A program made the translations under genes and the position numbers. Below are positions 7,830 through 64,000 of a stretch of 64,000 nt of DNA, piece after piece (position 1 is the stretch's first letter; each line of letters starts with the position of its first letter). This DNA is from Macrostomum lignano (taxonomy: Eukaryota). The stretch spans positions 1-64,000 of the forward strand of contig NIVC01000218.1 in NCBI GenBank assembly GCA_002269645.1. The letters run 5' to 3'. The notes beneath the pieces are model-generated. The model did no database searches. It was given only the letters and a program-made list of their open reading frames with translations, and was not told where the DNA came from.

Positions 7830-23755
<15,926 letters not shown>

Positions 23756-35270: not shown

Positions 35271-35339
35271 CTGGCGGGCAGGGGTAGGTGAAACAAGTGT
35301 TTATAATAATAATAAATATTCGCAAGAGAGCTGCAAGCA

Positions 35340-39245: not shown

Positions 39246-40110
39246 GAAAAATTTTTGACCGCAGAACTTCATTTCTACACTTGGTGCTGATTTTTAAAGA
39301 AATTATTATCCACTGCGATTGCCTTTACTAGCTATCGTCGAATGCAGTTCTATAGCTAGTGGATGGGGGCTCTAGACTAGACTAAAAGGTTCCCTTAACG
39401 AATTTATGCTCATCTGAGTTTCAAATTAGCCGCATGTCGTGTACCAATTTTAATTGACCCTTAATACGAGTACTAACCGCCAAAATACATGTACAGTCAA
39501 AGCCGTGCTCAGACATATAAATCAATAATAAAAAATAAGCTACCAAATAGTTTACAATTATGTATAAAACACGCGATAAGCTGATTGCGAACAATAACGA
39601 ATGCTGTTTTTATTAGAGTTGCAACTTATGAAATGTTTAGCAATAAAAAGCTGACAGGAAGTCATGCCTAAGCACCAGTTGAAAAGTACAGTCACACACA
39701 ATAGACAGCGGGCCACAGCATATTAGCTAAATGTGATGATATTTTAGATACAATAACAAAATAGATTGAAAAACTGGAAATGCTAGCTTGTTAAAAAAGT
39801 ATTGAAATAATTACTTTATCATTGCTGCTAAATGCAAGCACAGCAAATAATGCGACACACCAATAAAACGAAGGTAACATTGTTTTACAAAAATAGAATG
39901 AATATATAAGAGACCAAATCGAGAACAATGATTGCACAAACACAGGAGAAATGGCATTATTTAGCTAGCTAATAAAAATGTAGGACAAAAAAGTCGCGAC
40001 AACACTCAAAAGCTACTATAAGTAGACAAGTAGCAGTTTACACGATATACTGATTAAAAATACAAAAATAAGTGATTGGTGAAGATCAGTGACCAGCGAT
40101 CGGATTCCAC

Positions 40111-41512
40111 TCACTCCTGACCAGCCACCGGCGAGGTGCCGCGACCTCCGCAGTGCGGGCAGGTGCCGCTGCCGTCTTTAGCGGCGGCGTAGGCAGCGGA
40201 CTCGGCAATAGCAGCGGCGGCGGCGTCGGCGTCGTTAATCATGGCGGCCAGCAGGTCGGTCAGCTGCCGATTCTCCTCGGCCAGTTTGGCATTCTCTTCC
40301 AACGATTCGGACAGAGCCTGTCGGCGACTCTCGGCCAGTCTGGCCAGATATTCAGGCGAGTCCGGCTGCTCCTCGGCCGTCAGCCAGGCCAGCTCGGCGT
40401 CCGGCACACCGGTCTGGACGTTGGCATCAGTCAAAGCTGGCGGCAGCTCCGTCTGGGTGGCGGCTTCGCCGACGCGACGCCGATTCGAACGGCTGCTGAG
40501 AAATGGGAGATTGGATAGTTAGCCTACAGTGACTGGGTGCTAAGAAATGGGAGATTGGGTAGTTAGCCTACAGTGACTGGGTGCTAAGAAATGGGAGATT
40601 GGGTAGTTAGCCTACAGTGACTGGGTGCTAAGAAATGGGAGATTGGGTAGTTAGCCTACAGTGACTGGGTGCTAAGAAATGGGAGATTGGGTAGTTAGCC
40701 TACAGTGACTGGGTGCTAAGAAATGGGAGATTGGGTAGTTAGTCTACAGTGACTGGGTGCTAAGAAATGGGAGATTGGGTAGTTAGCCTACAGTGACTGG
40801 GTGCTAAGAAATGGGAGATTGGGTAGTTAGCCTACAGTGACTGGGTGCTAAGAAATGGGAGATTGGGTAGTTAGCCTACAGTGACTGGGTGCTAAGAAAT
40901 GGGAGATTGGGTAGTTAGCCTACAGTGACTGGGTGCTAAGAAATGGGAGATTGGGTAGTTAGCCTACAGTGACTGGCCGCTGAGAAATGGGAGATTGGGT
41001 AGTTAGCCTACAGTGACTGGCCGCTCTCCAACTACGTCTAACCTGAGCCAAGAAGTTCTATAAATGTTCAGATTTTCTAGAGTAGAAAAGTTAAGCAAAA
41101 ATAGCCATAGTTAGCACCCAGGCAATAAGGGATCTTTTATATGGTATTTTATTGATCATAAATCGAGGATAGTCGTTAGAGTTTGCACAGTGGTATCCTT
41201 AACTTTCAAACCTTCAGACACTGCACATTTTTTCATACATAGGGATTGACCTAAAGAAAGATTCTAGTTCCCAAGCAAAGATCCCAAGGATACCCGATTT
41301 CTAATCTCTAATTGACAAAACCAAGCACCAATAATCCCATTGATATTGTATTTGAATTCATAAATCTGCATAGACACAGACCTGCTAATAGTTGATTTAG
41401 CATCAGCAAATGGCTTGAATGCTGTCTTCTTCCGCAGCACAGTTGGCTTCAGCGCTTCCATTCTCAGACTGTGAGCAATATTTTCTTGGCCCAGATCAAA
41501 CTTGGATGCCAT
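40111..41512 (-). CDS. GMNN: Geminin-family protein, copy B. Exons 41512-41382, 40495-40111
   Basis: Same two-exon structure, both ORFs intact; AYAAAKDG here versus AYAVAEDG in copy A. Confidence 0.8.
40500..41022. repeat. 43-bp minisatellite in the geminin B intron, about 12 copies
   Basis: Same unit as 27473-28853, more homogeneous. Confidence 0.95.
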
Positions 41513-44500: not shown

Positions 44501-45352
44501 AAACTACTACCAGCTATAAGGAACAGTAGAGCTGCTTAACAAGAATGGAATGCAAAAATGTACAGAATATAAATTGAGATTAACGGCATATAAAATATGC
44601 ACATTGGGAAGTAATAAAAATGAGAACACCAAACTGGTGTACCAATATGACGAGGCAAGCAAGGAGAAGCGCACCGAACACACAAGTCTAATGAGAAATC
44701 ACAATTGAAACAATGACAAAAATAGTTGGAGCACAAAAAACCTAATAAAAACTGGAATGTTGCCATCGAAGCTGTGGGGTTTGGAGAATTTTTGGTGAGC
44801 AAAACAGCCAAATAGGTGTGGACAAAATAACCGGTAATATATATATATATAGCTCACAGGCTTGCTTGGTCTTCTCTCTATTAGAAGCAGCAACAGCAAT
44901 TCGATACTAAAAAGGCCAATTATTCTCTTTCAGCCAGTCCACCGGAAACTAAGAAAACATCAACTCTGATAAGAGTTATCAACACAGCGCCCACCAGAGG
45001 CAAACTCAAACACCAGGAAAAATGAGATTACACATTAAATTGATGGGACTCGGCAAAAAACTATGAGATTAAGACGAATTTTTGATGAGGACTTTGCGAC
45101 TAGATGGAAATTTGCTCTGTTAGAGCAAAAACATTTGTTGGAATACATGTAGCCACAGATACTTAAATAGCTAGACATGTCACTGAAATAAAAAATCTAA
45201 TAAACTTTAATTGATTCAACGTTTTTAAGCTGCAACAACCGCCGCTGGCTTTCTACAAGCAGACCCAATAAATTAGCAACTTAATTCTGTTTGATTGTCC
45301 TGTGTGCATAGCGAGCAAGAGGGAAAAGGGCCCCAAGTCCCAGCCAGACCGA

Positions 45353-45614
45353 GAGGCTCTTCACGGCAATCGATTCCAGAACCAGAATCGGTTCGGATTT
45401 CCAAGAAAAAAAGCAGTATAACTTTTTAACTTTGTTGAATGTTTGACTGCCTTAACAGCCTCACTTTGCACAATTTTTCACTTTCTTCTTGGCTATTGCC
45501 ATCCAATAATCAAAATTTTAAAGCACTAATATCTCTCTAGTTTAGGAGACAAAAAGTTATACTTTACAAATTGGTTCTGGTTCTAGAACCAGAACAAGCA
45601 ATATGAAGAGCCTC
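45353..45614. mobile_element. PIF/Harbinger-like MITE, 262 bp, present only in copy B
   Basis: TIR GAGGCTCTTCA...TGAAGAGCCTC; 3-bp TSD CGA; empty site at about 33610 in copy A; same family as 31197-31458. Confidence 0.82.
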
Positions 45615-46568
45615 CGATACACAGTTAGGTTTTCCTCCCTTTTGTCCGCTTGTCTGAATTTGATCTCTTTACTTTCTGCTCTCTCATTGGCTGAGCTAGA
45701 TTTCCCTGCCCCCCTTAGGCTGAGTTTCGTCCGTCTAACTTTGACTTCTCTCTCCTTACTGCTCTCTCATTGGCTGAGCTAGATTTTCCTGCCCCCCTTA
45801 GGCTGAGTTTCGTCCGTCTAACTTTGACTTCTCTCTCCTTACTGCTCTCTCATTGGCTGAGCTAGATTGGGCCAGACTGAGTTTCGTCCGTCTTGCGTTC
45901 ACTTGTATATCAAGTTAAATGCTTTCTCTTCATTCTTAACCCTATATGCTCCTGGGGCCACAACCCCGAGGAAGGAAAGAAAATTTAGCTGCTACATTAA
46001 ATTTAAGTAGCATGCGCAGACATATTACTGAAAAAAGAGTAGACGCTCTGCTTTTCATAACTTCAATTTCTAGTGGCATAGGAAGCTATTCTAGTATCTG
46101 TGTATGTAGCTAGGCTTTTCTCAGACAGATTCGATTGTTTCTTTAGACATCTCTTAATAAAGCGGCTAATGTATTGAGAAAGACTAAACACTGACTTAAA
46201 AAGTTGACATAAATGTAACAATTAAAGGAGCAAATAATAAAGGAGATCGCGCGCGTTTTTTAGTTAATTGTTTAGAAACATTATGACAATCATTAAAACA
46301 GTTAAGTTGAAACAAAATAAACTAAATTGGATGATTTTATTGCTAAGTTGAAAGGCAATATTTAGGAAAGCTTATTAATTGCAGTCAATAAAAAAGGTAT
46401 AGAGCGATTTTTGAGTTGTTTAAGGGGCGTTTCTTGGAATAGCTTAAGGCCTAAGGGCTACTTTTACAGTAGTTTAAGGAGTCTCTTGGAATAGCTTAAT
46501 GACGATTCTTATACTTACTGAACAAGGAGAATTTTTATTTAGGCAACCTGTGGGCTGATTTTTGGAGC

Positions 46569-48670
46569 TCACAGCGTCGACTTTGCCGACTCTTTGTTAC
46601 CGCCGCCGCGTCGGCCGGCGCTTTCGCTGCGCGCCTTCCGCCGACGGAACAGCCAAGATCCGGACAGCCGCTTCCGCCAGCTTTGCTGACCGGACTTGCC
46701 AGCTGCTTGCATCTGGTGAAGGCCGCCGCCAGTCACGGAGCGAACGCTGCCAGTGACGGAGCCGCCGCCAGCATTGGCGGATTCGTCCTGCTGCTGTTGC
46801 GGAGGCCGCGGCGTCTCCAGCGGGCTGACAACCCACAGACGGAGTGCCGATCTGCTCTCCCGGATTAGACGGCTCAGGTGCTCGTGCGATGCCCATTTCA
46901 CATCCTGGTCGCCGACTCCGATGACTACATCACGCGGCTCCAGGCCGTTCGCCTTCGCCTGGCCGCTGTCGTCTACTGAGGCCACGGTCACTGGAGCCTC
47001 GCCGGCCAGGCTGAACCCGAAGCTGCCGCTGCCGCCGCCGTCGCCTTCGCCGCGATGTAGCCGAATTTCCCGCGGCTGCGACCAGGCGTTGCGCGAATTG
47101 AAAAACCCGATTGGGCCCAGCGCGGTGAACAGGTCCTGCACCGGGTGGCGGTGGAAGTTCGGCTCATCTGGCGACAGGGCGCGGCCGATGCGGGCCCGGA
47201 TGCCGCTGGAGTAGAATGAGACCAGCTGGGCGCTGGGCTCCAGCTCGATGTCCATGTGCAGCGTGCGGGCTCTGGCGGGCAGGGGTAGGTGAAACAAGTG
47301 TTTATAATAATAATAAATATTCCCAAGAGAGCTGCAAGCATCCTGGAGCAATGCCTTCGACGACATCGTCCCACAACCAGCGCTGAGGCAATTCTGCCCA
47401 TTCCGCTGACTCCTGAGCACATGCCAGCGCGCCAGTACTGTACGCAGGCACGCACTCATACACACGCTCACACAGGGTGTACAGCGGCCCTGACTTTCTA
47501 ATCGTCAGGCATGTGCACCCTTGGTGCCCGCTAAGCTGCTCTGCCCCCTGAAAGGATGCCTTCTGCAAACACGAAAGTTTGAAGCTCGAAACCTCACAAG
47601 CATGAAACATCACATCTTCGAAAAAAAATTGAAGCTTGGAAGTTTCGTGCTTGTAGAAATGATTGACAAGACTTTTCGACGATAGGAAATTTGGAGCATG
47701 CGAAAGTGACTCGGCGAAATGATTTTATTGATGAGCAGCTGAGGATCTGGGAGGGTGCAGGCGGTGGCCTGGCAACTGAGGATCTGGGAGGCTGGCTCAG
47801 CACCTGAGGATCTGGGAGGCTGGCTCAGCACCTGAGGATCTGAGAGGCTGGCTCAGCAACTAAGGATCTGAGAGGCTGGCTCAGCAACTGAGGATCTGGG
47901 AGGCTGGCTCAGCACCTGAGGATCTGGGAGGCTGGCTCAGCAACTGAGGATCTGGGAGGCTGGCTCAGCATCTGAGGATCTGGGAGGCTGGCTCAGCACA
48001 TGAGGATCTGGGAGGCTGGCTCAGCAACTGAGGATCTGGGAGGCTGGCTCAGCAACTGAGGATCTGAGAGGCTGGCTCAGCAACTGAGGATCTGGGAGGC
48101 TGGCTCAGCAACTGAGGATCTGGGAGGCTGGCTCAGCAACTGAGGATCTGGGAGGCTGGCTCAGCAACTGATGATTTGAGCAACAATGGCAAAAACTACT
48201 ATCAGTAGCTTCAACTCAAATGAGTTAGTCCTTCAACGAGTTAAAAGTTAGTATCCCACTATAAACACTTGATGTCAAGAAATATTTTCAAAACAGAGAG
48301 CTAAACAGACAGTTGAACACTATTTCAATGCAAAAATCGTTTCGGTTAAAGACAGGATTCTCATACTGAGCAGTTCTATTTTTAGTGCTGCAGGTACAGA
48401 TCGTACCGGCTAATTCCGCTAAGTAAAGAATCTTTTAAAACCAATTCATTAGAACTTACTTAGAGTGCAGCCGATTTAGCGTGTTGCTGCACACTGCCAG
48501 GTCACTCAGCTTCTTGTTAAGCGACATCAACCGGATGGCCTCCTCGAAGCACGACATGGCCTCGGCTGCGTACAGTCGGGCTGAGGGATTCCGTGTGAGA
48601 GTTGAGTGAGCCGAATAGAATACTAGATTTTTAATGCTATCATGCAGTCACGGATTGAGAGGGGCAGACA

Positions 48671-48905: not shown

Positions 48906-51900
48906 GTAGCAGGTAACTAACCAAAGGCCCGCAGCTCGCCGGAGGTGGTGGGTTTCCTAGAATTCCTGGCCAGCAGGACTTCGGTCAGCCTGGTGACAAC
49001 CTCGGCCACTGGAACGGCCGTCCCGGACAAGGCCAGGGCGTCCACCATGAAGTTGGCCAAGGCGAGTCGGGCCAGTCCTTTGAAATAGTTGGTTTTGAGC
49101 TGCACCAGAGTCAGCCAGGTGTCCGGTATGAAGTCCGAGTAGCGCAGAATGTCGCCGGACAGTCGAGTGTCGACATTGTTGAATACGTCGCTGATAAACT
49201 CGGCGGCCTGAGCCCGGACCAGGTAGAACTCGGCCAGGCCCTGGATTGAATTCGGCTTTGACTGCGGCTGCTGGGCTGTAGGTTAATGCAGGTAAATTAT
49301 TTGGGGTCATTTGAGGTCACTAGTTGGAGCAACTGAGTTGCTGAGATGCCATGGCTCAGTGGGGAGTTGCTGAGATGCCATGGCTCAATGGGGAGTTGCT
49401 GAGATGCCATGGCTCAATGGGGAGTTGCTGAGATGCCATGGCTCAATGGGGAGTTGCTGAGATGCCATGGCTCAATGGGGAGTTGCTGAGATGCCATGGC
49501 TCGATTGGTGAGTTGCTGAGATGCCATGGCTCAATGGGGAGTTGCTGAGATGCCATGGCTCGATTGGTGAGTTGCTGAGATGCCATGGCTCGATTGGTGA
49601 GTTGCTGAGATGCCATGGCTCAATGGGGAGTTGCTGAGATGCCATGGCTCGATTGGTGAGTTGCTGAGATGCCATGGCTCAATGGGGAGTTGCTGAGATA
49701 CCATGGCTCGATTGGTGAGTTGCTGAGATGCCATGGCTCAATGGGGAGTTGCTGAGATGCCATGGCTCAATGGGGAGTTGCTGAGATGCCATGGCTCGAT
49801 TGGTGAGTTGCTGAGATGCCATGGCTCAATGGGGAGTTGCTGAGATACCATGGCTCGATTGGTGAGTTGCTGAGATGCCATGGCTCAATGGGGAGTTGCT
49901 GAGATGCCATGGCTCAATGGGGAGTTGCTGAGATGCCATGGCTCGATTGGTGAGTTGCTGAGATGCCATGGCTCAATGGGGAGTTGCTGAGATGCCATGG
50001 CTCGATTGGTGAGTTGCTGAGATGCCATGGCTCGATTGGTGAGTTGCTGAGATGCCATGGCTCAATGGGGAGTTGCTGAGATGCCATGGCTCGATTGGTG
50101 AGTTGCTGAGATGCCATGGCTCAATGGGGAGTTGCTGAGATACCATGGCTCGATTGTTGAGTTGCTGAGATGCCATGGCTCGATTGGTGAGTTGCTGAGA
50201 TGCCATGGCTCGATTGGTGAGTTGCTGAGATGCCATGGCTCAATGGGGAGTTGCTGAGATGCCATGGCTCAATGGGGAGTTGCTGAGATACCATGGCTCG
50301 ATTGGTGAGTTGCTGAGATGCCATGGCTCGATTGGTGAGTTGCTGAGATGCCATTGCTCAATGGGGAGTTGCTGAGATACCATGGCTCGATTGGTGAGTT
50401 GCTGAGATGCCATTGCTCAATGGGGAGTTGCTGAGATGCCATGGCTCGATTGGTGAGTTGCTGAGATGCCATGGCTCAATGGGGAGTTGCTGAGATGCCA
50501 TGGCTCAATGGGGAGTTGCTGAGATACCATGGCTCGATTGGTGAGTTGCTGAGATGCCATGGCTCGATTGGTGAGTTGCTGAGATGCCATTGCTCAATGG
50601 GGAGTTGCTGAGATACCATGGCTCGATTGGTGAGTTTCTTAGATGCCATGGCTCAATGGGGAGTTGCTGAGATGCCATGGCTCAATGGGGAGTTGCTGAG
50701 ATGCCATGGCTCAATGGGGAGTTGCTGAGATACCATTTGGGGAGTAATAAAAAGGTGGGGTGATAAAAATGCATTTCTAAGAAAACGACTTATTCAAGCA
50801 CTCACAAGGCTGCTGCTGCTGATAGTCCAATTGATATTGACACTCGTAGGCTTGCGCTCTCAACAGGTTTGCAGTCATCTCCAGTACGGCCGACTTCATA
50901 TCCATACTGGGCGCATTTGTGTAGTTCTCCGCCACGAACAGGATTGCGCCCCAGCTGCGCAGCAGCCATTTTAGCGCCGCCTCCGGCTGCTGACGGGCCG
51001 ACGAGAGCGCCAGCTGGCTGCATACGGCCGCCAAATTGTAGGCCATGCAGGCCTTCTCGAATGCCAAGCTGCGCTGGGTGAAGGCCACACCGGTGAACGA
51101 GTCGAACCAGTGGAAGAATAGGCTGTGCGAGCGCCACGGGGCGAAGAACCTGCGGTCCAGGTACCTGGGTGAGAGAGCCAGTTAGCGACTGATTCAATGA
51201 GCGAGTGAATTCCTAACTGAGTTCACAAGTTTACGAGTTCAGGAGTTTATGAGTGAGTTCAAGGTTCAAGGTTCGTCCACCATCCTGCGCCGGCGGCGAC
51301 TTCAACTGGCGGGCCACGTGATCCGGGCCGAGGGCTACTGCCCCCAACCTGTTCAGGACGTCCTGCTGCTCACCTTGCAGGGTCCGTTCAGGCAGGGTCG
51401 GGCCCGAACCCGTCGATACGTGGACGACACTGCCAACGAAGCGGACTTTGTTCGCTCCCAGGCTCTGCGGCGCGCCATCTGACGCGCCCTGCTCTAACTG
51501 TGACTGTGCATGCGGGGTCGCGTATTTTGTTGTTGTTGTTGTTGTTGTTGTCAAGGTTGAGTTCATGAGTTCATGAGTGAGTTCATGAGTGGGTTTATGA
51601 CCAAGTTCAAGGTTGAGTTCATGAGTTCATGAGTGAGTTCAGGAGTGGGTTTATGACCAAGTTCAAGGTTGAGTAAATGAGTTCATGAGTTCATAAGCGA
51701 GTTCATGAGCGAATTTATGAGTGAGCTCATGGGTGAGCTCATGAGTTTATGAGTGAGTTCATGAGTGAGGTTATGAGTTAATGAGTTTACAAATGATTAA
51801 TTCATGAGCGAGTTAATCAGCTACAAGCAGTCAGCTGAAGCGGCCAACTTACCACAGGTGATTCAAGTAGACAAAGATGTCCGCCACGCCCTGCTCGGAG

Positions 51901-52808
51901 CGCAGCGGCCTGCGCGCGGCCTCTCGCAGGCGGTTGAGCTCAACAAAGCAGTGCCGATAGTCGTCCCGCCTGGCGCTGTAGTGCTCCTCGATGAAGTCGG
52001 CCAGCGCAGGCTCATAGTCCAGCGGCCGAGTCTCCTTCAAGCCCAGCGGGATCATAGGCAAACAGGCGCTGGTGTCCTGGTACACCTCCAGCGCCTCGTT
52101 GATGTCGGCGAGTTCCCGCTGAAGCAGGTCCAGATTAGAATAGGCGTATTTCAATTCAACAGAAATTTGCGCCTTGGCCTGTTTGTCTCGCGTCACCCTC
52201 AGCATGTTCTCAGCGCCTTTGGTCAGCTGCAGCTCGCGGTGAATTTTCTCGTTCACCTCGCAGCGCTTCACCTGAAGGCGGGACCGGCCGGTCTGGCGGA
52301 CAGCCTGGCCTCGTTGTGGCTGACCGGGCAATTCTGATTGCCGCTCTTCCTGCTGCTGCTGTTGCTGTTGTTGCTGCTCTTGACGCTTGCGCAGATGCTC
52401 TAAATATTGTTGCTGCAAAAGCAGCTTCTGCTCTTCTAATTGTTGCTTTTTTTGCTGCGATAATTGCAGCGAAGCGGCGCCATTGCTGGTGGCGACGTGT
52501 GTCGGCGTAGCTGACGGCCGAGGCGGAGTCGGCGGCGGCTGAGGCTGCGGCTGCTGAGGCGAAGTTGGCGCTGATTGGCGGGGCGGAGGCCGCGGCGCCG
52601 GCGGCTTGTTGGAGCGAGGCGCCCGGCCAGCCGACTGGCCCGGCTGCTGCTGACGGTGCAGCCCCAGGCCGTTGCTCACTGCAGCTCCGCCGGAACTGGT
52701 ACCGTTTTGCTGCTGTTGCTGCTGTTGCTGCTGCTGCTGCCGCTGCTGCTGCCCGTTGCGAGGCAACTCTTCAGCGGTAGCCGACTTGCGGTATCCCACT
52801 GCTGTCGC
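46569..52808 (-). CDS. RHPN: Rhophilin (HR1 + Bro1 + PDZ). Exons 52808-51853, 51164-50806, 49275-48922, 48580-48460, 47271-46569; no genomic ATG found
   Basis: HR1 (QTGRSRLQ...[10 protein letters not shown]), MIPLGLKET, Bro1 (FHWFDSFTG...[15 protein letters not shown]), [12 protein letters not shown] and PDZ ([13 protein letters not shown]). All four introns are GT-AG with matching phases. Confidence 0.92.
47770..48172. repeat. 28-bp minisatellite, about 14 copies, last rhophilin intron
   Basis: Same family as 35780-36972. Confidence 0.93.
48668..48906. repeat. (CAGA)n microsatellite
   Basis: Directly visible. Confidence 0.95.
49333..50737. repeat. 29-30-bp minisatellite GAGTTGCTGAGATGCCATGGCTCAATGGG / ...CGATTGGT, about 48 copies
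   Basis: Visible array with two interspersed variants. Confidence 0.95.
51274..51550 (+). mobile_element. 5'-truncated non-LTR retrotransposon (LINE) 3' end
   Basis: Encodes [13 protein letters not shown], a typical C-terminal motif of RT ORFs; (GTT)n tail; TSD TCAAGGTT at 51266-51273 and 51551-51558. Confidence 0.78.
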
Positions 52809-53904
52809 CTGAAAATGGGCACGCGGAAGAGGCAGAGGTGTAGAATAGTTAGTATGTTTCAAATGTTCTCACAAATCAGTATAAACATGCGCTTACAGTT
52901 CACAGATGCAAAGTGAAAGGAAGAAGAGGGTGAGAGGTGAGTGGGAGGTAGAGAAAGAGGGCAGAAGGGGAAGGAGGATAAGAAGAGGTGAAGAGGGAGA
53001 AGCTGTGGTGGAGATGGAGAGGGAGAGAGTCAGAGTGAAGATGGGGAGAGGTAAAGGTAGATAAGAGAGGGAGAGAGATAGAGGTAGAGAAGAGGGAGAG
53101 AATAGAGCAAGTGAAAGCAGACAATAGATTTCGGCTATTGAAACAATTTTCTAATGCCTACTAGATAAAAAAGAAATAAATAAGCAATTGAAATATCTTT
53201 AAACAAGTTTTCGGCAGAAAAAAATGAGCAAAAAAGTAAAACTCCTAAAAATTGATTTATCTGCTTAGTTTGTGCTTCAGTCAGTGTAGCGCATGGAGTT
53301 CAGTTTTAGGCTTTGGGCTTTGTGTATACTAGTAAAGCCTGATGCTTAAAGTCGGTTAAAGTCGCAGAAATGGATAGCAGTAGGACTGAGCGCGCATTAA
53401 GTAGTATACAACCAATTTAATTAGTAAATTACTTAGAAAAGGTTTGAAAAAAGCAATAAATTTTAATTTAAAACAAACACACGCTTGGCTTAATTAAAAG
53501 TACTCTAATGCCTAATAAAGGCAATCTAAAGGCTGTTTATGGAGTATACGAGTAATAAACCAGTCAAGAGACCACGGTAGCTTAAAAATTTTTAAATCCT
53601 TTAAAAACCTTATTAAAGTACAGCAGTATACTCGTATTGTCATAATTGCATGGTCTTTTGACTGGTTAACGTTGCCTATACTACAGATTATAAAAGTCCA
53701 TTTTAATAGACTCCTGTTCGTGCTCTGATTAATAATAGTTGGGAGTACGCACCAGGGCCAGAGGTTGGCTCTCCTTTTAAAGCAACTTCTGCCAACATTT
53801 TCAAGGGCTACAGAACAGGAGTCAATTAAATTATCAATTAAAAGAGAAACTTAGCCAAAACAAAAACAGTAGTCCATCCAGTATTAATATCGCTAGCCAG
53901 AAGC

Positions 53905-56900
53905 TTAAACAATCGCCCTAGCTGCATTGTACTGCAGGCTGGCTTTGAACTGGTGCAGGTCTCCAGTCCAGACGATGCACTCTTCTTCGTCGCCGTCCTT
54001 GGTTTGGCTGTCGACAGTGTCTGTTGAGTAGCAAAGCGGCATGGCGAATGGCTTCTTGCCAGCCCGGCCGGACACTTTCTTGGTCGCGCCTTCCGCCTTG
54101 AACAGTGTGGGGGATGAATAGTGATTATTGCAGGAGGGCTGCCAGCGCAACGCCTTCGGCGATATCGGCTCACAACCGGCGCTGAGGCCATTCTGCCCAT
54201 TCCACTGACTCCTGAACACATACAAGCGCGCCAATACTGTACGCAGGCACGCAGTCATGCACACGCTCACGTGGAGTGAATAGCGGCCCTGACTGTCTAA
54301 TCGTTCACACAAGCCCCAAGTGAATGAATGTGCCTGCACACGGAATCCAACCAGGGGTCGTGGCACGAGAGTCAGAACCGTTTAATAAAGTGAGCTACTC
54401 TGCCCCTGTGTGTGACAGGAGGCTTAGAGACAGTTACGAGTATATTAACAGTAGGAATACAAAGCCATTTTTCCGCCCGTCGAACTACCAAGAGGGGGGG
54501 GAAAAATTTCCCCCCCCCCTGACAATTTTTTTTGCTGCGCCGGAACGGAGCAACGCAGGCACACGAAATTCAAGAACACGGGCTAACTTTTTGTTGCGCA
54601 CCTTCTCAAACAAGAATCAAGTCGCCAGCCCTTCGGACCGTCGAGATATTCGACGATTCTGCCAGAAGGTCGGATTTTTCCCATAAGCGCTAGTGTATTC
54701 AGTACACCCCTGTGCGCCAAATAGCACTGCGCCTCAGTGCAGCCTTGCCAAGTCTCCAAATTTCATCAGCACGTCGACCAAATGTGTCTGCATCAGTTCT
54801 GACTTCGTTGGTTACTGGCCTTCCCCGAGACGGAGCTTCTAGACCTTCAACAGGTGGCACCAGGTGACTATGAACACCTTGATGCGAATTTCTCTAGTTT
54901 CACCGATCAAGCCTCGACAGTAGGCAAGCCTCAACTGCCAGACACCCTCAGCTAGTCTCCTGAGCATTCCTTCATCATCCCGACACCGTCGGCACCTTCA
55001 ACAGGTGGCATCAGGTGACTATGGACGTCCTATTGCAAATATGTCAGGTCTTTCTTATCAAGCTTCAATAATGGGCAAACCTCAACCAACGGACATTGTC
55101 AGCTAGTCTCTCAAGCATTCCGTCATCATCCCGACGCCGTCGGCTCCTTCAACAGATTACACCAGGTGACTATGGACAGCCTGTTGCAAATATGTCAGGT
55201 TTTTCTTATCAAGCTTCAATAATGAGCAAACCTCAACTGCTGGACATCCTCAGCTAGTCAGTCGAGCATTCAGCCATCACCCCGACGCCGTCGGCACCTT
55301 CAACAGGTGGCACCAGGGGACTATGGACAGCCTGATAAGAATTTCTCTAGTTTCGCCGATCAAGCCTGGATAGTGGGCAAAAATCAACTGCTGGACATCC
55401 TCAGCTAGTCAGTCAAGCATTCAGCCATCACCCCGACGCCGTCGGCACCTTCAACAGGTGGCACCAGGGGAGTAAGGACAACTGAGCGTGATTTTTCATC
55501 ATGCTCTTAACATTTCTGAATCATTAAAAAATGAAAAAACGGATTGAATTTACTGGCTTCTGTAGGGCGTAGGCCGTGCGCTGCACTCTCTGCCCCACAT
55601 TATTATTCATGACTCATTTTCTCGCCTAAACTTGTTTACCAATTCTCGACCAATCGCGCATCGCTGCACCCCACCCCACAATATTGACTAATAAATATAT
55701 TGAGTAAACAGAGCCATACAGAGGCCACCTTTTCGGCACGCAAACCCAGACTTCACAGCTTCTTAGAAGCATAACCCTTTCTGCATAAAAATTGGGTTCA
55801 ATATTATAGTTGAATAAACTAAACAGCTTTTCGAATAAAATATGTATGTAGCTCCTATGTATAAAAGTATGTGTAATAATAATAATAAATATACAGCAAC
55901 ATGAGTTCAAGCTTAACTATAGCAATTTCCGTGCTTTGAAAATTTTGAGAGCTTCAGAAATGTTAAGAGCATGATGAAAAATCACGCTCAGGTGTCCTTA
56001 CTCCCCTGGTGCCACCTGTTGAAGGTGCCGACGGCGTCAGGGTGATGGCTGAATGCTTGACTGACTAGCTGAGGATGTCCAGCAGTTGATTTTTGCCCAC
56101 TATCGAGGCTTGATCGGCGAAACTAGAGAAATTCTTATCAGGATGTCCATAGTCAGCTGGTGTAATCTGTTGAAGGTGCCGACGGCGTCGGGGTGATGGC
56201 TGAATGCTCGACTGACTAGCTGAGGATGTCCAGCAGTTGAGGTTTGCTCATTATTGAAGCTTGATAAGAAAAACCTGACATATTTGCAACAGGCTGTCCA
56301 TAGTCACCTGGTGTAATCTGTTGAAGGAGCCGACGGCGTCGGGATGATGACGGAATGCTTGAGAGACTAGCTGACAATGTCCGTTGGTTGAGGTTTGCCC
56401 ATTATTGAAGCTTGATAAGAAAGACCTGACATATTTGCAATAGGACGTCCATAGTCACCTGATGCCACCTGTTGAAGGTGCCGACGGTGTCGGGATGATG
56501 AAGGAATGCTCAGGAGACTAGCTGAGGGTGTCTGGCAGTTGAGGCTTGCCTACTGTCGAGGCTTGATCGGTGAAACTAGAGAAATTCGCATCAAGGTGTT
56601 CATAGTCACCTGGTGCCACCTGTTGAAGGTCTAGAAGCTCCGTCTCGGGGAAGGCCAGTAACCAACGAAGTCAGAACTGATGCAGACACATTTGGTCGAC
56701 GTGCTGATGAAATTTGGAGACTTGGCAAGGCTGCACTGAGGCGCAGTGCTATTTGGCGCACAGGGGTGTACTGAATACACTAGCGCTTATGGGAAAAATC
56801 CGACCTTCTGGCAGAATCGTCGAATATCTCGACGGTCCGAAGGGCTGGCAACTTGATTCTTGTTTGAGAAGGTGCGCAACAAAAAGTTAGCCCGTGTTCT

Positions 56901-59900
56901 TGAATTTCGTGTGCCTGCGTTGCTCCGTTCCGGCGCAGCAAAAAAAATTGTCAGGGGGGGGGAAATTTTCCCCCCCCCCCCTCTTGGTAGTTCTACTGTT
57001 AAATAGCCACCTGGCAGCAGGTCGGTAATAAGTATATATTCTAATAAAAATGAGTCAGGTTTACGGGCACGAGCTTATAGCAGATGTCACCCAGTATATT
57101 AGATACAAAGTATTAGGCAGAAACCGCAGCTGGAAAATTAAAGATCAAAGGTGCTAAGCTATTAACAACACCGACTGCTTGCATCGCACCTTCCAGTGAC
57201 GAATTGTTTCTGCAAACTTCGTGCCATTGAATTATTAGCATTGAAAGCCAGTCTAGACACCTTTAAACTTGAGCTGACCCGCTCTACTGAACTCGAACCT
57301 ATTCTCTACTCTGCCGAATCTACTCAGACACCCATTCTACTCTTACTTCACAAAAAAATCTACCCATTTCCACTCTACCCTACTAAAGCCTACTCAGATA
57401 CACTCTACTCTACCAAAACCTATCAACATTCAATCTACTCTACCAAAACCTATCAACATTCAATCTACTCTACCAAAACCTATCAACATTCAATCTACTC
57501 TACCAAAACCTATCAACATTCAATCTACTCTACCAAAATATATCCAGATTCAGTCTACCAAACCTACCAAGACGCACTCTACTCTACCAAATTCCACCAA
57601 GACTCACTCTACTCTACCAAAATCTACCAAGACTCACTCTACTCTATCAAGACTCACTCTACTCTACCAAGACTCACTCTACTCTACCAAGACTCGCTCT
57701 ACTCTACCAAGAGTCAATTTACTCTAACAAAATCTACCAATACTCACTACTCTAGCAAAATCTACCAAAACTCAGTCTACTCTACCAAACAAGACTCACT
57801 CTAATGTATCAAAATCTACACAGACTCATTCTGCCAAAACCTACCAACATCCAATCTACTCTACCAAACCTACCAAGACCCACTCTACTCTATTACGAGC
57901 TATAATCTACAAAATCTACTCTACTATATAAAAAACGATGAAGCCTCTCTACCATAATCTATCCCCGATTTTACTATACTCTACCAAAACACCCAGACGC
58001 ACTCTACTCTACCATGTACCAAAATCGACTCCACTCCACCAAAAGCTACAAAGATCTAAACCATGACCCAACTCACCTGAAAGGTGAATGACCGCCTGCC
58101 AGTGGAGCGCAGAGCCCGCTGATAGAACTCGATGGCCTCAGCCTTAGTAACCGAGTGCAGCAGCATCTCAGCCTCGGTGTAGTGCAGTCCAAAAGCGGCA
58201 GGCGGACAGGCCGGGCCATTGTCCAGTATCGCGCACCAGTACCGATCAGCCTGCTGAGTCATGCCGACATCCTCAACCAGCAGCAGGTCGACAAGAGATC
58301 TGGCGTAATTCGAGAACGCCTCGTCCGACATGCCGGTCAATAGCTTGAGAAAGCGGCCGCCAGTGAACTTGTCCACCCTGGCCTGCAGCTGGGCCATGCT
58401 GAACTGGTCCGCCTGGCTGTTCACCTGCACCATGAACCCGATGGCGCCGTTAGTCTGCCGACTGTCGCAGTACACTTGGTAGCCTAGCTGGTGCTTGGTG
58501 CGCAGATAGTCGTAGCACGGCTCGGACATCATGTGCTGAAACCAGTCGGCAGGTTGGAACTTGTTTGTTTGACTACTTACAGTAGCAAAAAACTACACAG
58601 GTATGTCTAATCAGAAAGTGAGCATTCGAAAATGCTTCCTATATAAAAACTATTGCTATTTTTGTGCCGAAAAAACAATGAAAAAGTTTATATCCCCGTG
58701 TAGTGTATTTTTCTGTTTAGGGGTGGCCGTACCGGCCCTCTCATGTGCCAGCGACCCAGGCTCAATTCCAAGTGCAGTCACATTAATTTGGGACTGAATT
58801 GGAACCTCGGCTTGGCTCTGCTCGTGCAATTAACGGCCTTGAGAGCCAACCCCCCCAAAGGCGCAGTGAAGTGTACATGCCTAACGATAAATAAAGTTAG
58901 GGCCGCTGTACACTCCTGTGTGAGTGTGTGCCTGTGCGTATGACTGCGTACGTATCCGCGCGCTTGTGTGACAATGTCGCTTAAAGTGCGCCAGGGTCAT
59001 ACATGCGCAACCTCCAAAATTCGGTCGGCCATGCGACTTAGTTTTAACAAAAATGCGACGTAGTTTTTGGCCAAAAATGCGACTTACACATCAAAAAACT
59101 CTAAAGCAAAATAAACGCAACTTTGGGTAAACGGCAGGAGTAACTATAACTGTCTTATTAAGCCAAAATGCCTCGTCAGCTACTTAGTACTACTACTTAG
59201 GTAAATTTTTGGGTGGGTATTTTTGCGACTTCCTTGGTTGGCCGCCAAATCGGTCGGCCGAATCGGCCGACTCGGCCGACTGTTGCGCATGTATGGCCAG
59301 GGTGCACACAACCCTCCTGCCTTATAAAAAGTCCATTTGTCTGGTAAAGTCAGTCTTCAAATATTTTCTAAGAAAGCAGTTTTTCCTTGCCTAGTACTTG
59401 AAATTTGTAATGGCTAGAGAATCTAAACCTGTAATGTTGCTTTAACTAATGCTTTTCTAATATAGAAATTAATAGAAGAAATGTGGCAGGTGTGGCAGCC
59501 AACCTTTATTAATTTGCCACCCTCCGGTCTGCTCTGCTTAACTTGCAGCGCTGGCGGTGGGGTTTCTTAGAATATGGCATATTCTATGAATAACTTTTCG
59601 GTAAATCCTTTTACAAATACATGTACAGTCACAGTACTATGCACACTAGCAGTGCGACAGTTCCGGGATAGATTGAAAGCACACAAACTAGGCTAGCATG
59701 GCATATCATTGCCGGCGATTCGTGCATAATTTGCGACAGAATGAAACCTGAAACCGGGGCTAGTAATAGGATCTTCCACTGAATCGCAGCAGTAACAAAA
59801 AGGGATATAAAAAGGTTCTTAATCTTAATACGGATACGGAATGGAATTGAGAGGGAGTCAGCTGACTGATACTGACTGATTAAGATGATTAAACCCGGAT

Positions 59901-60551: not shown

Positions 60552-60685
60552 CTGCGGGAAAGGCGGGGATATCATGGAGTACACGATAGGTATTGATAGC
60601 TGTTAATCAAAAAGGAGTGGTTCATGGAGATCTGTCTAGAAATCTGGCGTTGAAAACCACTTTTTATTTAGCAAAAAACTTCCAA

Positions 60686-61340
60686 AAGTCTTCCTTCATA
60701 GCCAAATGTCTTCCATTATAGCCAAATGTCTTCCCCCATAGCCAAATGTCTTCCATCATAGCCAAAAGTATTCCTTCATAGCCGATGTCTCTCTTCATAG
60801 CCATATGTCTTCCATCATAGCCAAATGTCTTCCTTCATAGCCAAATGTCTTCTTTCATAGCCAAATGTCTTCCTTCATAGCCAAATGTCTTCCTTCATAG
60901 CCAAATGTCTTCCTTCATAGCCAAATGCCTTCCTTCGTAGCCAAATGTCTTCCTTCATAGCCAAATGCCTTCCTTCGTAGCCAAATGTCTTCCTTCATAG
61001 CCAAATGCCTTCCTTCATAGCCAAATGTCTTCCATCATAGCCAAATGTCTTCCTTCATAGCCAAATGTCTTCTTTCATAGCCATATGTCTTCTTTCATAG
61101 CCATATGTCTTCCATTATAGCCAAATGTCTTCCATCATAGCCAAATGTCTTCCATCATAGCCAAATGTCTTCCTTCATAGCCAAATGTCTTCCTTCATAG
61201 CCAAATGTCTTCTTTCATAGCCATATGTCTTCTTTCATAGCCATATGTCTTCCATTATAGCCAAATGTCTTCCATCATAGCCAAAATTATTCCTTTATAG
61301 CCGATGTCTCTCTCCATAGCCAAATGTCTTCCTTCGTAGC
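60686..61340. repeat. 20-bp minisatellite CCAAATGTCTTCCTTCATAG, about 33 copies
   Basis: Visible array. Confidence 0.93.
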
Positions 61341-61890
61341 AAATTTACTGCTTTTTACGAGCTATTAAATAGTATAAAACAACTAGCAACCGTTTATTGC
61401 AAAGAAATGAGACTCAAGATAGAATCCGCTACTCCAGATTTTATATTAGGAGTTCCTTGGTTCTGGGCGCATATTTACGTAGCTAATCAATCACGGAGAG
61501 AGAAATAAAATTTGGCAATCCAGCAAAAGTGATAGCTAGTGGACTCATCAATCTGAAAATAGCGCAAAAAGAGAAGAGATGCCTAATTTCAATCTTCTCT
61601 CAGCTTCTTCTAGAATTTTAAAAAAGCTCATTTTTCAACGATAGTTTAACTCTCCGCATAGGAGTTCCTGAAAATCCAGAGTCCAGACCGAGGATAACTC
61701 TGCACAATTGGACAACAGATCCGTTAGCCAATAGAACTCCTTGCTAACTCGCTAGATAGCTAGCTAGTGAGTTAGTCTGAATATACATGGATACTGCAGT
61801 AACCATTATACAGCGTTGTAGTTAATTTCAACCGAAAAAATCTTTCATAATCAAAACGACACAGCACAAACAGTGCAACAGCAAACAGTC

Positions 61891-62080: not shown

Positions 62081-62261
62081 GTGAGTGACGGACAGCGATT
62101 GGTTCGAATTGAGAACACATTCTTGTACGATTTAATAGAAAAATCTGTTTTAAGAAACAATTCTACAAAATGCCCTTGATTTTTCGTCCTACAAAATTAC
62201 TAAGATGGACCAGGTTTAAGGGACATTCGAGAACCTTTAAAATTACTTCATTCAAGGCCAG

Positions 62262-62778
62262 GTGTCTTCCTTCGTAGCCAAATGCTTTCCTTCATAGCCA
62301 AATGTCTTCCTTTATAGCCAAATGCTTTCCTTCATAGCCAAATGTCTTCCTTCATAGCCAAATGCTTTCCTTCATAGCCAAATGTCTTCCTTCATAGCCA
62401 AATGCCTTCCCTCATAGCCAAATGTCTTCCATTATAGCCAAATGTCTTCCATTATAGCCAAATGTCTTCCATTATAGCCAAATGCCTTCCCTCATAGCCA
62501 AATGTCTTCCTTCATAGCCAAATGTCTTCCTTCATAGCCAAAGTCTTTCTTCATAGCCAAATGTCTTCCATCATAGCCAAATGTCTTCCATCATAGCCAA
62601 ATGTCTTCCTTCATAGCCAAATGTCTTCCTTCATAGCCAAATGTCTTCCATCATAGCCAAATACCTTCCTTCATAGCCAAATTTCTTCCTTCGTAGCAAA
62701 ATGCCTTCCTCTGTAGCCAAATGCCTTCCTTCATAGCCAAATGCCTTCCTTCGTAGCCAAATGCCTTCCTTCGTAGCC
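62262..62778. repeat. Second array of the same 20-bp minisatellite, about 26 copies
   Basis: Same unit and orientation as 60686-61340. Confidence 0.93.
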
Positions 62779-64000
62779 ATTAAATGAAGTCCAACAGAAG
62801 ACCTTGAGCTCATTAAAATGGAGCCCTGGTTAACCAAATATGTTGACAAGCAAGCATCCATCAAGCATATTTCGCATTCTATAGCAAAATATCTAATACA
62901 GCCTTCAATATTTTCGCCCCCAGCAAGCCATTAGCCATTAGCGGTGCTCATATTTGGCTACAATTTTCGGATATTGTATTCGTGAGAAAACGAATATTGA
63001 TACTAATTATCTATACTCGTAGCTATGTTCAAGGAGACACGCAAATATCATTTGATAATATATAGTAGTATATGCCAAGCTATACTCGCCTGCCCAAAAT
63101 TTACATCAGGAGTTAAAGCGAATCCCAAGCGCTATGAAAAAATGGTTGGTTGGTAGCAACTAGTTGCGACCACACTGCTAATGTGGGCCCAAATCGCATT
63201 ACACTGTAGAAAGGAAATAAAGAATGGGAAATATTTAAGAATTCTGCTCCATTCCCCGATCCGACGTTGATTTAATATTCATAATTAATAGATCCAACCA
63301 ACTTATACGCACTAGAAAGTATATTTGCATTAGATGAGGACTGGGAACCCCACGGTAAGTAATCGAACCGATTAACTAGATTTCAGCAATTGAGACTCGC
63401 TAATCATTTCAACTAGAACCACCGCCTTTGAAGTCTAAAAAAACTCTACTCTCTACTTTAGCACAATATTGCGCAGCAGCCCCCACACCACCTATTAGTT
63501 AGAATCGATTGAGAACTGAGAATCTGGTCTCGGTTTGTCTCTATGCAAGCAGCAAGCATCCTATAGGAATCCGTAAAGATAGAAACGAAAGCTGCAAAGG
63601 AGAGCCAGACAGCAGTTGCAGTTAGTAAGATAAATAGCCCCTACGAGCGCACACTTCGTCAAGCAATGCTTTCTTATATGAGAGATGGCAGGGGAAGAAG
63701 AGCAGGCCGAGCATGTCCGGTTCGAGTAGATTGGCTAATATACTAAATTGAGTAGCCTAGCCTAGCATTCACAGCCGGTCAGCCGTGAGGCAACGGACAG
63801 CATCCAGGCAGCATACAAAACTTGCTTTGTCTGACCAACGGCTGATGAGAGCAATGCACTCTTAATCTGTAGGCGTCTTTACTTTTGTTAACTAATCGGT
63901 CTGATGTCGTTCGTTTTGAATAGGAAATAGTTGTGACAAACTGAAAGATCTGGGGAGTATCAGTGACCCAGTGAATGATCCGGATAGTATCAGTGACCCA

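What the first reader, a model, noticed from the sequence alone, without database searches (positions are those of the whole stretch)
52808..53905. Rhophilin has no ATG: candidate nardilysin-rhophilin operon with the start codon donated by a spliced leader
Seen: the rhophilin frame begins at a textbook 3' splice site (TACTAAC branch point, pyrimidine tract, TTTCAG|GCG at 52808, phase 0). The first in-frame Met lies inside HR1. The ORF-track start at 52862 is TTG, not ATG. I found no ATG-plus-donor exon in the 1.1 kb up to the co-oriented nardilysin stop (53905); that gap has ATTAAA (about 53705) and long U/pyrimidine-rich tracts on the coding strand. Established: flatworm spliced leaders end in AUG, which can act as the initiator Met, and SL trans-splicing resolves polycistronic transcripts. 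Inference: SL-AUG|GCG ACA GCA is in frame, so rhophilin may depend on trans-splicing for its start codon. This rests on the host being a flatworm.
Basis: partly seen in the sequence, partly recalled or inferred. Interest (0 to 1): 0.72.

Follow-up and report, generated by a model that had tools for sequence, protein, structure and literature searches.

The report
Rhophilin start codon from spliced leader
In the flatworm Macrostomum lignano the rhophilin gene has no start codon of its own and very probably gets its AUG from the trans-spliced leader RNA, a mechanism already known in flatworms, so this is an ordinary if tidy example and mainly an annotation fix.

Summary
On the minus strand a strong 3' splice site (TACTAAC, pyrimidine tract, TTTCAG|GCG at 52808, phase 0) opens the rhophilin reading frame. 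The first in-frame Met (52205) lies about 30 residues inside the region conserved with other rhophilins. The 1096-nt gap back to the upstream M16 peptidase stop has no ATG exon with a usable donor.

The window is Macrostomum lignano assembly Mlig_3_7, scaffold NIVC01000218.1, bases 1-64000. The published spliced leader (SL) of this species ends in ATG.

The public transcript-based annotation calls rhophilin a 5'-partial protein with no Met (PAA87724.1, Mlig016776g2). In the two homeologous loci the annotated coding sequence starts exactly at the first base after the same TTTCAG. In this locus it starts 6 nt later.

The upstream peptidase fragment is Mlig016776g1. Two unrelated proteins sharing that prefix means one assembled transcriptional unit was cut in two by the authors' trans-splicing/poly(A) pipeline.

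So an SL-donated AUG is well supported (about 0.8), and co-transcription is likely (about 0.6) despite unusually long spacing. I saw no SL reads directly. The mechanism is known (Cheng et al. 2006), so this is a new member of a known kind and interest is low.

The parts
52809..52814 (-). 3' splice acceptor TTTCAG. It matches the M. lignano SL trans-splice acceptor motif [T/C]TNCAG.
   Evidence: Sequence. Motif from PMC8629364. Best acceptor in 52900-52330. Unique in the window by combined criteria. Identical in all 3 homeologous loci.
52848..52854 (-). Branch-point-like TACTAAC. Its branch A lies 40 nt upstream of the AG, and a pyrimidine tract follows at 52815-52847.
   Evidence: A CTAAC-type motif is also seen upstream of the rhophilin exon 2 acceptor.
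51853..52808 (-). Rhophilin exon 1. It has no ATG in frame until 52205 and encodes the N-terminal Q/P-rich extension, the HR1 domain and the start of BRO1. Its donor is CCTGTG|GTAAGT.
   Evidence: The annotated 5'-partial CDS of PAA87724.1 starts at 52802.
52299..52808 (-). Low-complexity N-terminal extension of about 170 codons upstream of the conserved RQTGRSRLQ...HR1 region. With the SL AUG it would read [16 protein letters not shown]...
   Evidence: The frame is open (chance about 0.10 by dinucleotide shuffles). GC is 61-76%, like coding exons, against 22-43% in the gap. The only indel among the 3 copies is 9 nt, which preserves the frame.
52203..52205 (-). First in-frame genomic ATG (Met202 of the exon), inside HR1.
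52447..52483 (-). Out-of-frame ATG at 52483-52481 (frame +1, context gcaATGg). Its 15-codon ORF runs through an A7 run at 52453-52447. One extra A would bring this ATG into frame.
   Evidence: A7 is present in all three separately assembled loci.
52809..53904 (-). 1096-nt spacer between the M16 stop codon and the rhophilin acceptor. It is either an outron or an intercistronic region. It is AT-rich and contains a 200-nt pyrimidine tract at 52905-53104.
52868..52896 (-). The only two GT[AG]AG donor-like motifs in the spacer: GTAAGC at 52896 and GTGAGA at 52872, which lie 88 and 64 nt upstream of the acceptor. Neither gives an in-frame ATG, because in-frame TGA codons lie at 52902-52900 and 52878-52876.
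53702..53707 (-). First ATTAAA after the M16 stop, a candidate poly(A) signal. Others are at 53467 and 53421.
53905..54096 (-). Last exon of the M16A peptidase gene (Mlig016776g1), including the TAA stop at 53907-53905.
   Evidence: The exact 212-aa product equals PAA87725.1.
58077..58535 (-). Penultimate M16 exon (PqqF-like_C_4 and Peptidase_M16_C matches). Its donor CAG|GTGAGT is in phase 0. The annotated partial CDS starts at 58523.
50806..51164 (-). Rhophilin exon 2 (BRO1).
   Evidence: Exact spliced mapping of PAA87724.1.
48922..49275 (-). Rhophilin exon 3 (BRO1).
48460..48580 (-). Rhophilin exon 4.
46569..47271 (-). Rhophilin exon 5 (PDZ), including the stop codon.

Best explanation
The rhophilin pre-mRNA of Macrostomum lignano is SL trans-spliced at the TTTCAG| acceptor, with first exon base 52808. 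The 35-nt spliced leader ends in AUG. The junction ...UUGCAUG|GCG ACA GCA... puts that AUG in frame with an ORF that has no genomic start codon. The mature mRNA therefore encodes M-ATAVGYRK... followed by a Q/P-rich extension of about 170 residues, then HR1, BRO1 and PDZ. The public 'partial' protein records are in fact complete apart from the SL-encoded Met.

Shown here: the gene anatomy; the absence of any genomic start codon; the host and its SL sequence; and that the transcript-based gene models begin at the acceptor.

Inferred: that the 5' end is an SL junction, and that the SL AUG is the one translated.

The pre-mRNA is probably co-transcribed with the upstream M16A peptidase gene as one transcriptional unit (Mlig016776, g1 and g2). 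That part is less secure, at about 0.6.
For: Host and locus. The window is identical to NIVC01000218.1 of GCA_002269645.1. The EAG channel exons match M. lignano UniProt entries.

The leader. The SL is CGGTCTCTTACTGCGAAGACTCAATTTATTGCATG. About 30% of genes are trans-spliced, and the acceptor motif is [T/C]TNCAG (PMC8629364).

No genomic start. The acceptor is in phase 0 with no stop after it, and the first in-frame Met lies inside HR1. No ATG with a consensus donor exists in the 1096-nt gap.

The acceptor is real. It is the only site in the window that meets all the acceptor criteria.

Public gene models. PAA87724.1 (Mlig016776g2, partial) starts AVGYRKS at 52802. In homeologous loci L002 and L003 the annotated gene starts at 13144 and 13061. 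Those positions are exactly the first base after TTTCAG. The product lengths of 833 and 834 aa fit a CDS that begins ATAVGY.

One transcriptional unit. The g1 and g2 products are unrelated proteins that share one transcriptional-unit prefix. [quoted passage not shown]

Precedent. In Schistosoma mansoni the SL AUG acts as initiator Met (Cheng et al. 2006, as summarised in PMC9851317).

Comparator. The neighbouring EAG gene has an ordinary genomic ATG at 23755.
Against: I saw no SL-containing read or cDNA. The SL junction is inferred from where the public gene models begin.

In this locus the model starts 6 nt downstream of the acceptor, not at it.

Two consensus-type donors lie 64 and 88 nt upstream of the acceptor. 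[quoted passage not shown] In parasitic flatworms such cis-splicing is rare at operon-resolving SL sites (PMC12582326).

The spacing is long for a flatworm operon. It is at least about 600 nt from the nearest ATTAAA and 1096 nt from the stop. The mode in M. lignano is about 100 nt and the median in S. mansoni is 99 nt.

Codon-usage scoring of the low-complexity extension did not single out the rhophilin frame.

The low divergence of the extension among the three copies is shared with intron 1, so it does not prove coding constraint.
Confidence: 0.8

Rival explanations
1. Rhophilin is SL trans-spliced and uses the SL AUG, but it is monocistronic. It has its own promoter in the 1.1-kb spacer, and the upstream sequence is an outron rather than an intercistronic region. 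The shared transcriptional unit would then be a read-through or assembly merge.
For: The spacer is far longer than the roughly 100-nt mode for M. lignano operons and the 99-nt median in S. mansoni.

Two GT[AG]AG donors lie 64 and 88 nt upstream of the acceptor. That fits the 'Upstream Mono' architecture, in which cis- and trans-splicing share an acceptor. Cis-splicing is strongly prevented at operon-resolving sites (PMC12582326).

Only about 40% of trans-spliced M. lignano genes are assigned to operons.
Against: The public annotation puts the M16 fragment and rhophilin in one transcriptional unit, as g1 and g2 of Mlig016776. The adjacency, with a spacer of similar length, is kept in all three homeologous loci. 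The published M. lignano operon criterion (at most 1 kb after removing repeats) is probably met once the 3'UTR and the 200-nt pyrimidine repeat are subtracted.
Confidence: 0.3
2. The true start is the genomic ATG at 52483. It is hidden because the A7 run at 52453-52447 is really A8, through an assembly error or a frameshift in this copy. The acceptor at 52808 would then end a short 5'UTR intron that starts at 52896 or 52872.
For: It is the only ATG between the acceptor and Met202. Its context is good (gcaATGg). One extra A gives [19 protein letters not shown]..., with an N-terminus of about 60 residues like other rhophilins. Consensus donors lie just upstream of the acceptor. The chance of the rhophilin frame being open upstream of this ATG is only modestly low, about 0.10.
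Against: A7 is present in all three separately assembled homeologous loci. The acceptor is in phase 0. GC content jumps to coding-like values right at the acceptor. The public models treat the whole exon as CDS from the acceptor onward. An SL AUG spliced at 52808 would then open a long upstream ORF overlapping the real start.
Confidence: 0.03
3. An unannotated cis-spliced 5' exon supplies the ATG. It would either have a non-consensus donor or lie upstream within or beyond the M16 gene. This includes an in-frame M16-rhophilin fusion made by skipping the M16 last exon.
For: In flatworms SL acceptors are often shared with cis-splicing.

The M16 penultimate-exon donor (CAG|GTGAGT, exon ends at 58077) is in phase 0, so joining it to 52808 would stay in frame.

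One formal combination exists: ATG at 52888, donor at 52872, and weak acceptors at 52801 or 52678.
Against: No ATG with a consensus donor in phase 0 lies in the gap. The formal combination bypasses the much stronger acceptor at 52808 and would frameshift if it used that acceptor. RNA-seq-based gene models in three loci show no upstream exon.
Confidence: 0.05
4. There is no upstream AUG at all. Translation starts at Met202 or at a non-AUG codon and gives an HR1-truncated protein, or this gene copy is not translated.
For: No genomic ATG exists upstream of Met202. M. lignano carries redundant homeologous copies.
Against: Met202 lies about 30 residues inside the conserved HR1 region. All five exons are intact, and all three copies keep the frame with only 3n indels in exons. 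The SL AUG would be the first AUG on the mRNA and is in frame.
Confidence: 0.04

Closest known systems
Schistosoma mansoni mRNAs that use the flatworm SL 3'-terminal AUG as initiator methionine (Cheng, Cohen, Ndegwa & Davis 2006, J Biol Chem; summarised in PMC9851317 and PMC5832876)
   Same: The SL ends in AUG. The acceptor is in frame with an ORF that lacks its own start codon. The SL supplies the Met.
   Different: The species is a different, free-living macrostomid, and the gene is rhophilin. Translation from the SL AUG is not shown here. The resulting N-terminus is a long low-complexity extension.
M. lignano multi-gene transcriptional units and operons (Wudarski et al. 2017, PMC5730564; Ustyantsev & Berezikov 2021, PMC8629364)
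   Same: Co-oriented neighbouring genes sit in one assembled transcriptional unit, which is split at a trans-splice site. The acceptor fits [T/C]TNCAG.
   Different: The spacer of about 0.6-1.1 kb sits at the long end of the published distance distribution, whose mode is about 100 nt. The upstream member is annotated only as a 212-aa 3' fragment.
'Upstream Mono' SL acceptor sites shared with cis-splicing in parasitic flatworms (Calvelo et al. 2025, PMC12582326)
   Same: Consensus donors lie just upstream of an SL acceptor at the 5' end of a gene.
   Different: Cis-splicing here is only a sequence-based possibility. If it happened, it would give an mRNA without a start codon.
slORFs, meaning ORFs created by SL-borne start codons (Song et al. 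2023, PMC9851317)
   Same: The start codon is contributed by the leader.
   Different: Here the SL AUG would start the main conserved ORF, not an alternative or overlapping one.

Membership tests
mRNA initiated at the flatworm SL 3'-terminal AUG | The host has an SL RNA whose leader ends in AUG | tested here: met
   The window is M. lignano NIVC01000218.1. The published SL ends ...TTGCATG (PMC8629364; PMC10468722).
mRNA initiated at the flatworm SL 3'-terminal AUG | The acceptor is in phase 0 with the ORF and no stop follows it | tested here: met
   TTTCAG|GCG ACA GCA..., open through HR1, BRO1 and PDZ.
mRNA initiated at the flatworm SL 3'-terminal AUG | No genomic in-frame AUG upstream of the conserved protein region | tested here: met
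   The first in-frame Met is residue 202, inside HR1. No ATG exon lies in the gap. The A7 run that keeps ATG 52483 out of frame is present in 3 loci.
mRNA initiated at the flatworm SL 3'-terminal AUG | SL sequence joined to this acceptor in transcripts | not testable with these tools
   The evidence is indirect only. RNA-seq-based gene models start exactly at the acceptor in 2 homeologous loci and 6 nt downstream of it here, with no upstream exon.
mRNA initiated at the flatworm SL 3'-terminal AUG | Translation starts at the SL AUG | not testable with these tools
   This needs Ribo-seq, N-terminal proteomics or a reporter assay.
Flatworm operon (polycistronic unit resolved by SL trans-splicing) | Same-strand adjacent genes in one primary transcript | tested here: inconclusive
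   Same strand. The public names Mlig016776g1 and g2 for unrelated proteins imply one assembled transcriptional unit. I saw no reads.
Flatworm operon (polycistronic unit resolved by SL trans-splicing) | Short intercistronic distance: at most 300 bp (Calvelo 2025) or at most 1 kb after repeat adjustment (Ustyantsev & Berezikov 2021) | tested here: inconclusive
   The stop-to-acceptor distance is 1096 nt. The nearest ATTAAA lies 613 nt from the acceptor. 200 nt of the spacer is simple pyrimidine repeat. The 300-bp rule is not met. The 1-kb rule is probably met.
Flatworm operon (polycistronic unit resolved by SL trans-splicing) | No cis-splicing into the resolving acceptor | tested here: inconclusive
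   Two GT[AG]AG motifs lie 64 and 88 nt upstream. Whether they are used is unknown.
Rhophilin (HR1-BRO1-PDZ Rho-binding scaffold) | HR1, BRO1 and PDZ domains in that order | tested here: met
   Pfam HR1 (39 bits, above cut-off), the start of BRO1, and PDZ. Identity to arthropod and vertebrate rhophilins is 40-44%, with E down to 4e-61. Precomputed Pfam hits for the 828-aa product are HR1, BRO1 and PDZ.
M16A metallopeptidase (nardilysin / insulin-degrading enzyme family) | C-terminal inactive M16 domains. The nardilysin-specific features lie in the N-terminal half. | tested here: inconclusive
   PqqF-like_C_4 and Peptidase_M16_C matches. The best solved relatives are insulin-degrading enzyme, E=2e-9. 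Family membership is met. Nardilysin versus IDE is not resolved from the two exons annotated here.

The most novel reading that the evidence does not exclude
The same acceptor may be used in two ways. Cis-splicing from the donor-like motifs at 52896 or 52872 would give an mRNA with no start codon. SL trans-splicing would give the only translatable form. The choice between cis- and trans-splicing would then act as an on/off switch for rhophilin translation. A related point: many M. lignano proteins deposited as 'partial' may be complete SL-AUG-initiated proteins.
Probability: 0.08. Interest if true: 0.55.

Novelty: new member of a known kind. Interest (0 to 1): 0.22.

Why it matters
The biology is not new. 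Flatworm leaders ending in AUG are known to supply initiator methionines, and M. lignano is known to trans-splice about 30% of its genes.

The value is practical. GenBank and UniProt list this rhophilin (PAA87724.1, A0A1I8HTJ7) as partial or as fragments, while the evidence says it is complete once the leader's AUG is added.

The same signature could be used to count SL-AUG-dependent genes across the M. lignano genome. The signature is a 5'-partial CDS that begins exactly at a [T/C]TNCAG acceptor in phase 0. I found no published count of this kind for M. lignano in the library searched.

Tried and rejected
Searches that found nothing useful:
- The first two protein searches missed every Macrostomum rhophilin. 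The first was swamped by poly-Q words. The second returned nothing closer than 44% arthropod hits. The exhaustive representative search later found it.
- Rfam found nothing in the window.
- No SL-like sequence is encoded in the window.
- The raw 337-aa ORF is not on record.
- Supplement searches for RHPN, rhophilin or NRDC in four papers found nothing. The Wasik 2015 genome paper is not held.
- Exact look-up of my reconstructed 833- and 834-aa homeolog proteins found nothing.

Analyses that did not discriminate:
- Codon-usage log-odds trained on 894 codons from the window did not pick out the rhophilin frame in the low-complexity extension.
- The lack of ATGs in 52808-52484 is not significant.
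- Divergence among the three copies is low in the extension (0.2% against 1.3% in the gap). Intron 1 is equally invariant, so I do not count this as coding constraint.

Explanations considered and largely rejected:
- An assembly homopolymer error hiding the ATG at 52483. A7 is present in all 3 loci.
- An ATG exon in the gap.
- An alternative in-frame acceptor. All the others lack a pyrimidine tract.
- The g1/g2 suffixes meaning gene copies rather than cistrons. They can denote copies, but here the two products are unrelated proteins, so the shared prefix must come from one transcriptional unit.

Full report
**What is in the sequence.** Everything relevant lies on the minus strand. The sequence reads catACTAACtattctacacctctgcctcttccgcgtgcccattttcag|GCG ACA GCA GTG GGA TAC.
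- TACTAAC is at 52854-52848, the AG at 52810-52809, and the first exon base at 52808.
- The frame opens after an in-frame TGA at 52871-52869 and runs 337 codons. The ORF tool's nominal start at 52862 is TTG.
- The exon carries a Pfam HR1 match (residues 182-238, 39 bits) and the first 70 positions of BRO1. A PDZ exon lies at 46569-47271.
- Aligned with eight arthropod, tardigrade and vertebrate rhophilins, homology starts at RQTGRSRLQ. The first in-frame Met (52205, residue 202) replaces a Leu in the invariant GAEN[L/M] motif, about 30 residues into the conserved region.
- The upstream co-oriented gene ends with TAA at 53907-53905. Its two visible exons match PqqF-like_C_4 and Peptidase_M16_C, and insulin-degrading enzyme among solved structures. 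It is therefore an M16A peptidase. 'Nardilysin' specifically was not tested.

**Is the acceptor more than chance?** Yes.
- Among the 56 frame-compatible AGs between 52900 and 52330, only 52808 combines at least 75% pyrimidine upstream with the YTNCAG motif.
- Over both strands of the whole window only 10 sites meet those two criteria. Only this one also has a CTRAY motif 12-55 nt upstream.
- Other introns in the window use GT[AG]AG donors. At least one has a CTAAC branch-like motif.

**Is there another source of a start codon?** I found none that is credible.
- The 1096-nt gap holds 8 ATGs.
- Only three ATG...GT phase-0 combinations exist. Their donors are GTTGCT, GTATAC and GTCTAT.
- None has the species' GT[AG]AG donor.
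- The gap's only two GT[AG]AG motifs are at 52896 and 52872. Joined to 52808, both meet an in-frame TGA immediately.
- Between the acceptor and Met202 there is one ATG, at 52483. It is in frame +1 and opens a 15-codon ORF.

**Host and leader.**
- EAG potassium-channel exons in the window are essentially identical to M. lignano UniProt entries.
- The window proved identical, coordinate for coordinate, to NIVC01000218.1 of assembly GCA_002269645.1, which is Mlig_3_7.
- The M. lignano spliced leader is CGGTCTCTTACTGCGAAGACTCAATTTATTGCATG.
- About 30% of genes are trans-spliced and 15% sit in operons.
- The motif enriched at trans-splice acceptors is [T/C]TNCAG, and cis donors are GT[G/A]AG (PMC8629364).
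- A later paper on two congeners notes that the leader probably includes the final ATG as a start codon (PMC10468722).
- Use of the leader's AUG as initiator Met is established in Schistosoma mansoni. [quoted passage not shown] 2006, as summarised in PMC9851317).

**The public annotation, which decided the matter.**
- The exhaustive representative search found a 636-aa M. lignano fragment identical to the window's exons.
- Its 90% cluster contains GenBank PAA87724.1, 'BOX15_Mlig016776g2, partial'. That protein is 828 aa and starts [13 protein letters not shown] with no Met.
- It maps as five exons: 52802-51853, 51164-50806, 49275-48922, 48580-48460 and 47271-46572, then the stop.
- This annotation comes from RNA-seq. 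Assembled 'transcriptional units' are cut into genes by a pipeline that uses trans-splice-site and poly(A)-site signals (PMC5730564; PMC5816591).
- The upstream 212-aa gene (CDS 58523-53905) is PAA87725.1, 'BOX15_Mlig016776g1, partial'.
- The suffixes g1 and g2 can denote duplicate loci. Here the two products are unrelated proteins lying side by side, so the shared prefix can only mean they were cut from one transcriptional unit.

**Homeologous loci.**
- The same gene pair occurs on two other scaffolds. In L002 (NIVC01001942.1) the M16 fragment is followed after 1153 nt by an 833-aa gene. In L003 (NIVC01000562.1) it is followed after 1096 nt by an 834-aa gene.
- In both loci the annotated gene starts, to the nucleotide, at the first base after TTTTCAG (13144 and 13061).
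- Applying the window's exon structure gives open CDSs of exactly 833 and 834 codons that begin ATAVGYRK.
- A transcription start site would not fall exactly on a splice acceptor in two loci. A cis-spliced 5' exon would have been part of the model.
- The simplest reading is that these 5' ends are the mapped trans-splice sites.
- In the window's own locus the model starts 6 nt further in. I cannot explain that offset.

**Rivals.**
- *Frameshift-hidden start.* This was the most interesting rival. One more A in the A7 run at 52453-52447 would bring the well-contexted ATG at 52483 into frame and give a normal-length N-terminus.
  - All three separately assembled loci have A7.
  - The frame upstream of that ATG is open, with a chance of about 0.10.
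  - The acceptor is in phase 0.
  - GC content jumps from 22-43% in the gap to 61-76% right at the acceptor.
  - I put this rival at about 3%.
- *An upstream cis exon or an M16-rhophilin fusion.* The M16 donor at 58077 is in phase 0, but no gene model shows such a join. About 5%.
- *Initiation at Met202 or at a non-AUG codon.* This would truncate a conserved HR1 domain. About 4%.

**The operon question.**
- *For co-transcription:* the shared transcriptional unit, and the conserved adjacency in three loci.
- *Against:* the spacing.
  - The nearest ATTAAA is 613 nt from the acceptor, and the stop is 1096 nt away.
  - The mode in M. lignano is about 100 nt, and the median in S. mansoni is 99 nt.
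  - Two consensus-type donors lie just upstream of the acceptor. In parasitic flatworms that goes with monocistronic 'shared' acceptors, not operon-resolving ones.
- The published M. lignano criterion (at most 1 kb after removing repeats) is probably met.
- I put co-transcription at about 0.6. A monocistronic gene with its own promoter and outron is at about 0.3. Under that reading the leader would still supply the AUG.

**Comparison and novelty.**
- This locus works like the S. mansoni mRNAs of Cheng et al. 2006.
- It passes every membership feature I could test: a leader ending in AUG, a phase-0 acceptor, and no genomic AUG.
- The two features that need transcripts or protein could not be tested.
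- The phenomenon is known, and the trans-splice site is implicit in a public annotation.
- What is new is only the gene-level conclusion that the deposited 'partial' rhophilin is complete once the leader's Met is added. Interest is low.

**Limits.**
- I saw no reads.
- Translation from the SL AUG is inferred from the scanning model and from the schistosome precedent.
- Codon-usage statistics and divergence among the copies were not informative for the low-complexity extension.
- The names of the two homeologous rhophilin models could not be retrieved.

Noticed in passing
window 23972-36201 and 37045-48180: Tandem segmental duplication with a period of about 12-13 kb and 93-97% identity. It includes a second, orphan copy of the rhophilin PDZ last exon at 34568-35470, downstream of the annotated gene's last exon at 46569-47271. 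It may be real or an assembly artefact of this highly duplicated genome.
   Followed up: partly
window 54482-55520 and 55953-56993 (M16 last intron): Inverted duplication of about 1 kb at 98.6% identity inside the last intron of the M16 gene. It is probably a transposable element or a large palindrome.
   Followed up: no
window 54147-54304, 47348-47505, 35308-35504, 19394-19505, 39067-39191, 26035-26173, 2389-2513: A dispersed repeat of about 130-200 bp with 75-87% identity, present in both orientations. Two copies sit just upstream of the last exons of the M16 gene and of rhophilin.
   Followed up: partly
window 53702-53830 (minus strand): An 18-nt inverted repeat, 94% complementary, flanks a 93-nt loop in the M16 3' region. 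The first ATTAAA lies in its 3' arm. The RNA fold has a z-score of -3.3. It could be a MITE-like insertion or a 3'UTR hairpin.
   Followed up: partly
window 58523-58535: The annotated M16 gene model (PAA87725.1) is only a 212-aa 3' fragment. It begins 12 nt inside the penultimate exon, just after a TTTCAG acceptor and past two in-frame ATGs (CAC ATG ATG TCC|GAG). The homeologous M16 fragment (P0326, loci L002 and L003) is also 212 aa. The rest of the M16 gene upstream is not annotated in the 10 kb examined.
   Followed up: partly
window 23755 (minus strand): The EAG potassium-channel gene downstream has an ordinary genomic ATG ([15 protein letters not shown]...). A TTAG sits 2 nt upstream of it and upstream ATGs lie further 5', so it may also be trans-spliced, but with its own start codon.
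   Followed up: no
window 49334-50736, 8847-11469, 27464-28855, 35787-36972, 60682-61344, 62240-62780: Long minisatellite arrays with periods of about 20-45 nt fill several introns, including rhophilin intron 2. That intron is 1530 nt here but 818 nt in both homeologs.
   Followed up: partly
window 52802 versus 52808: The GenBank CDS of this locus starts 6 nt (two codons) downstream of the acceptor. The two homeologous loci start exactly at it. The reason for the offset is unexplained.
   Followed up: partly
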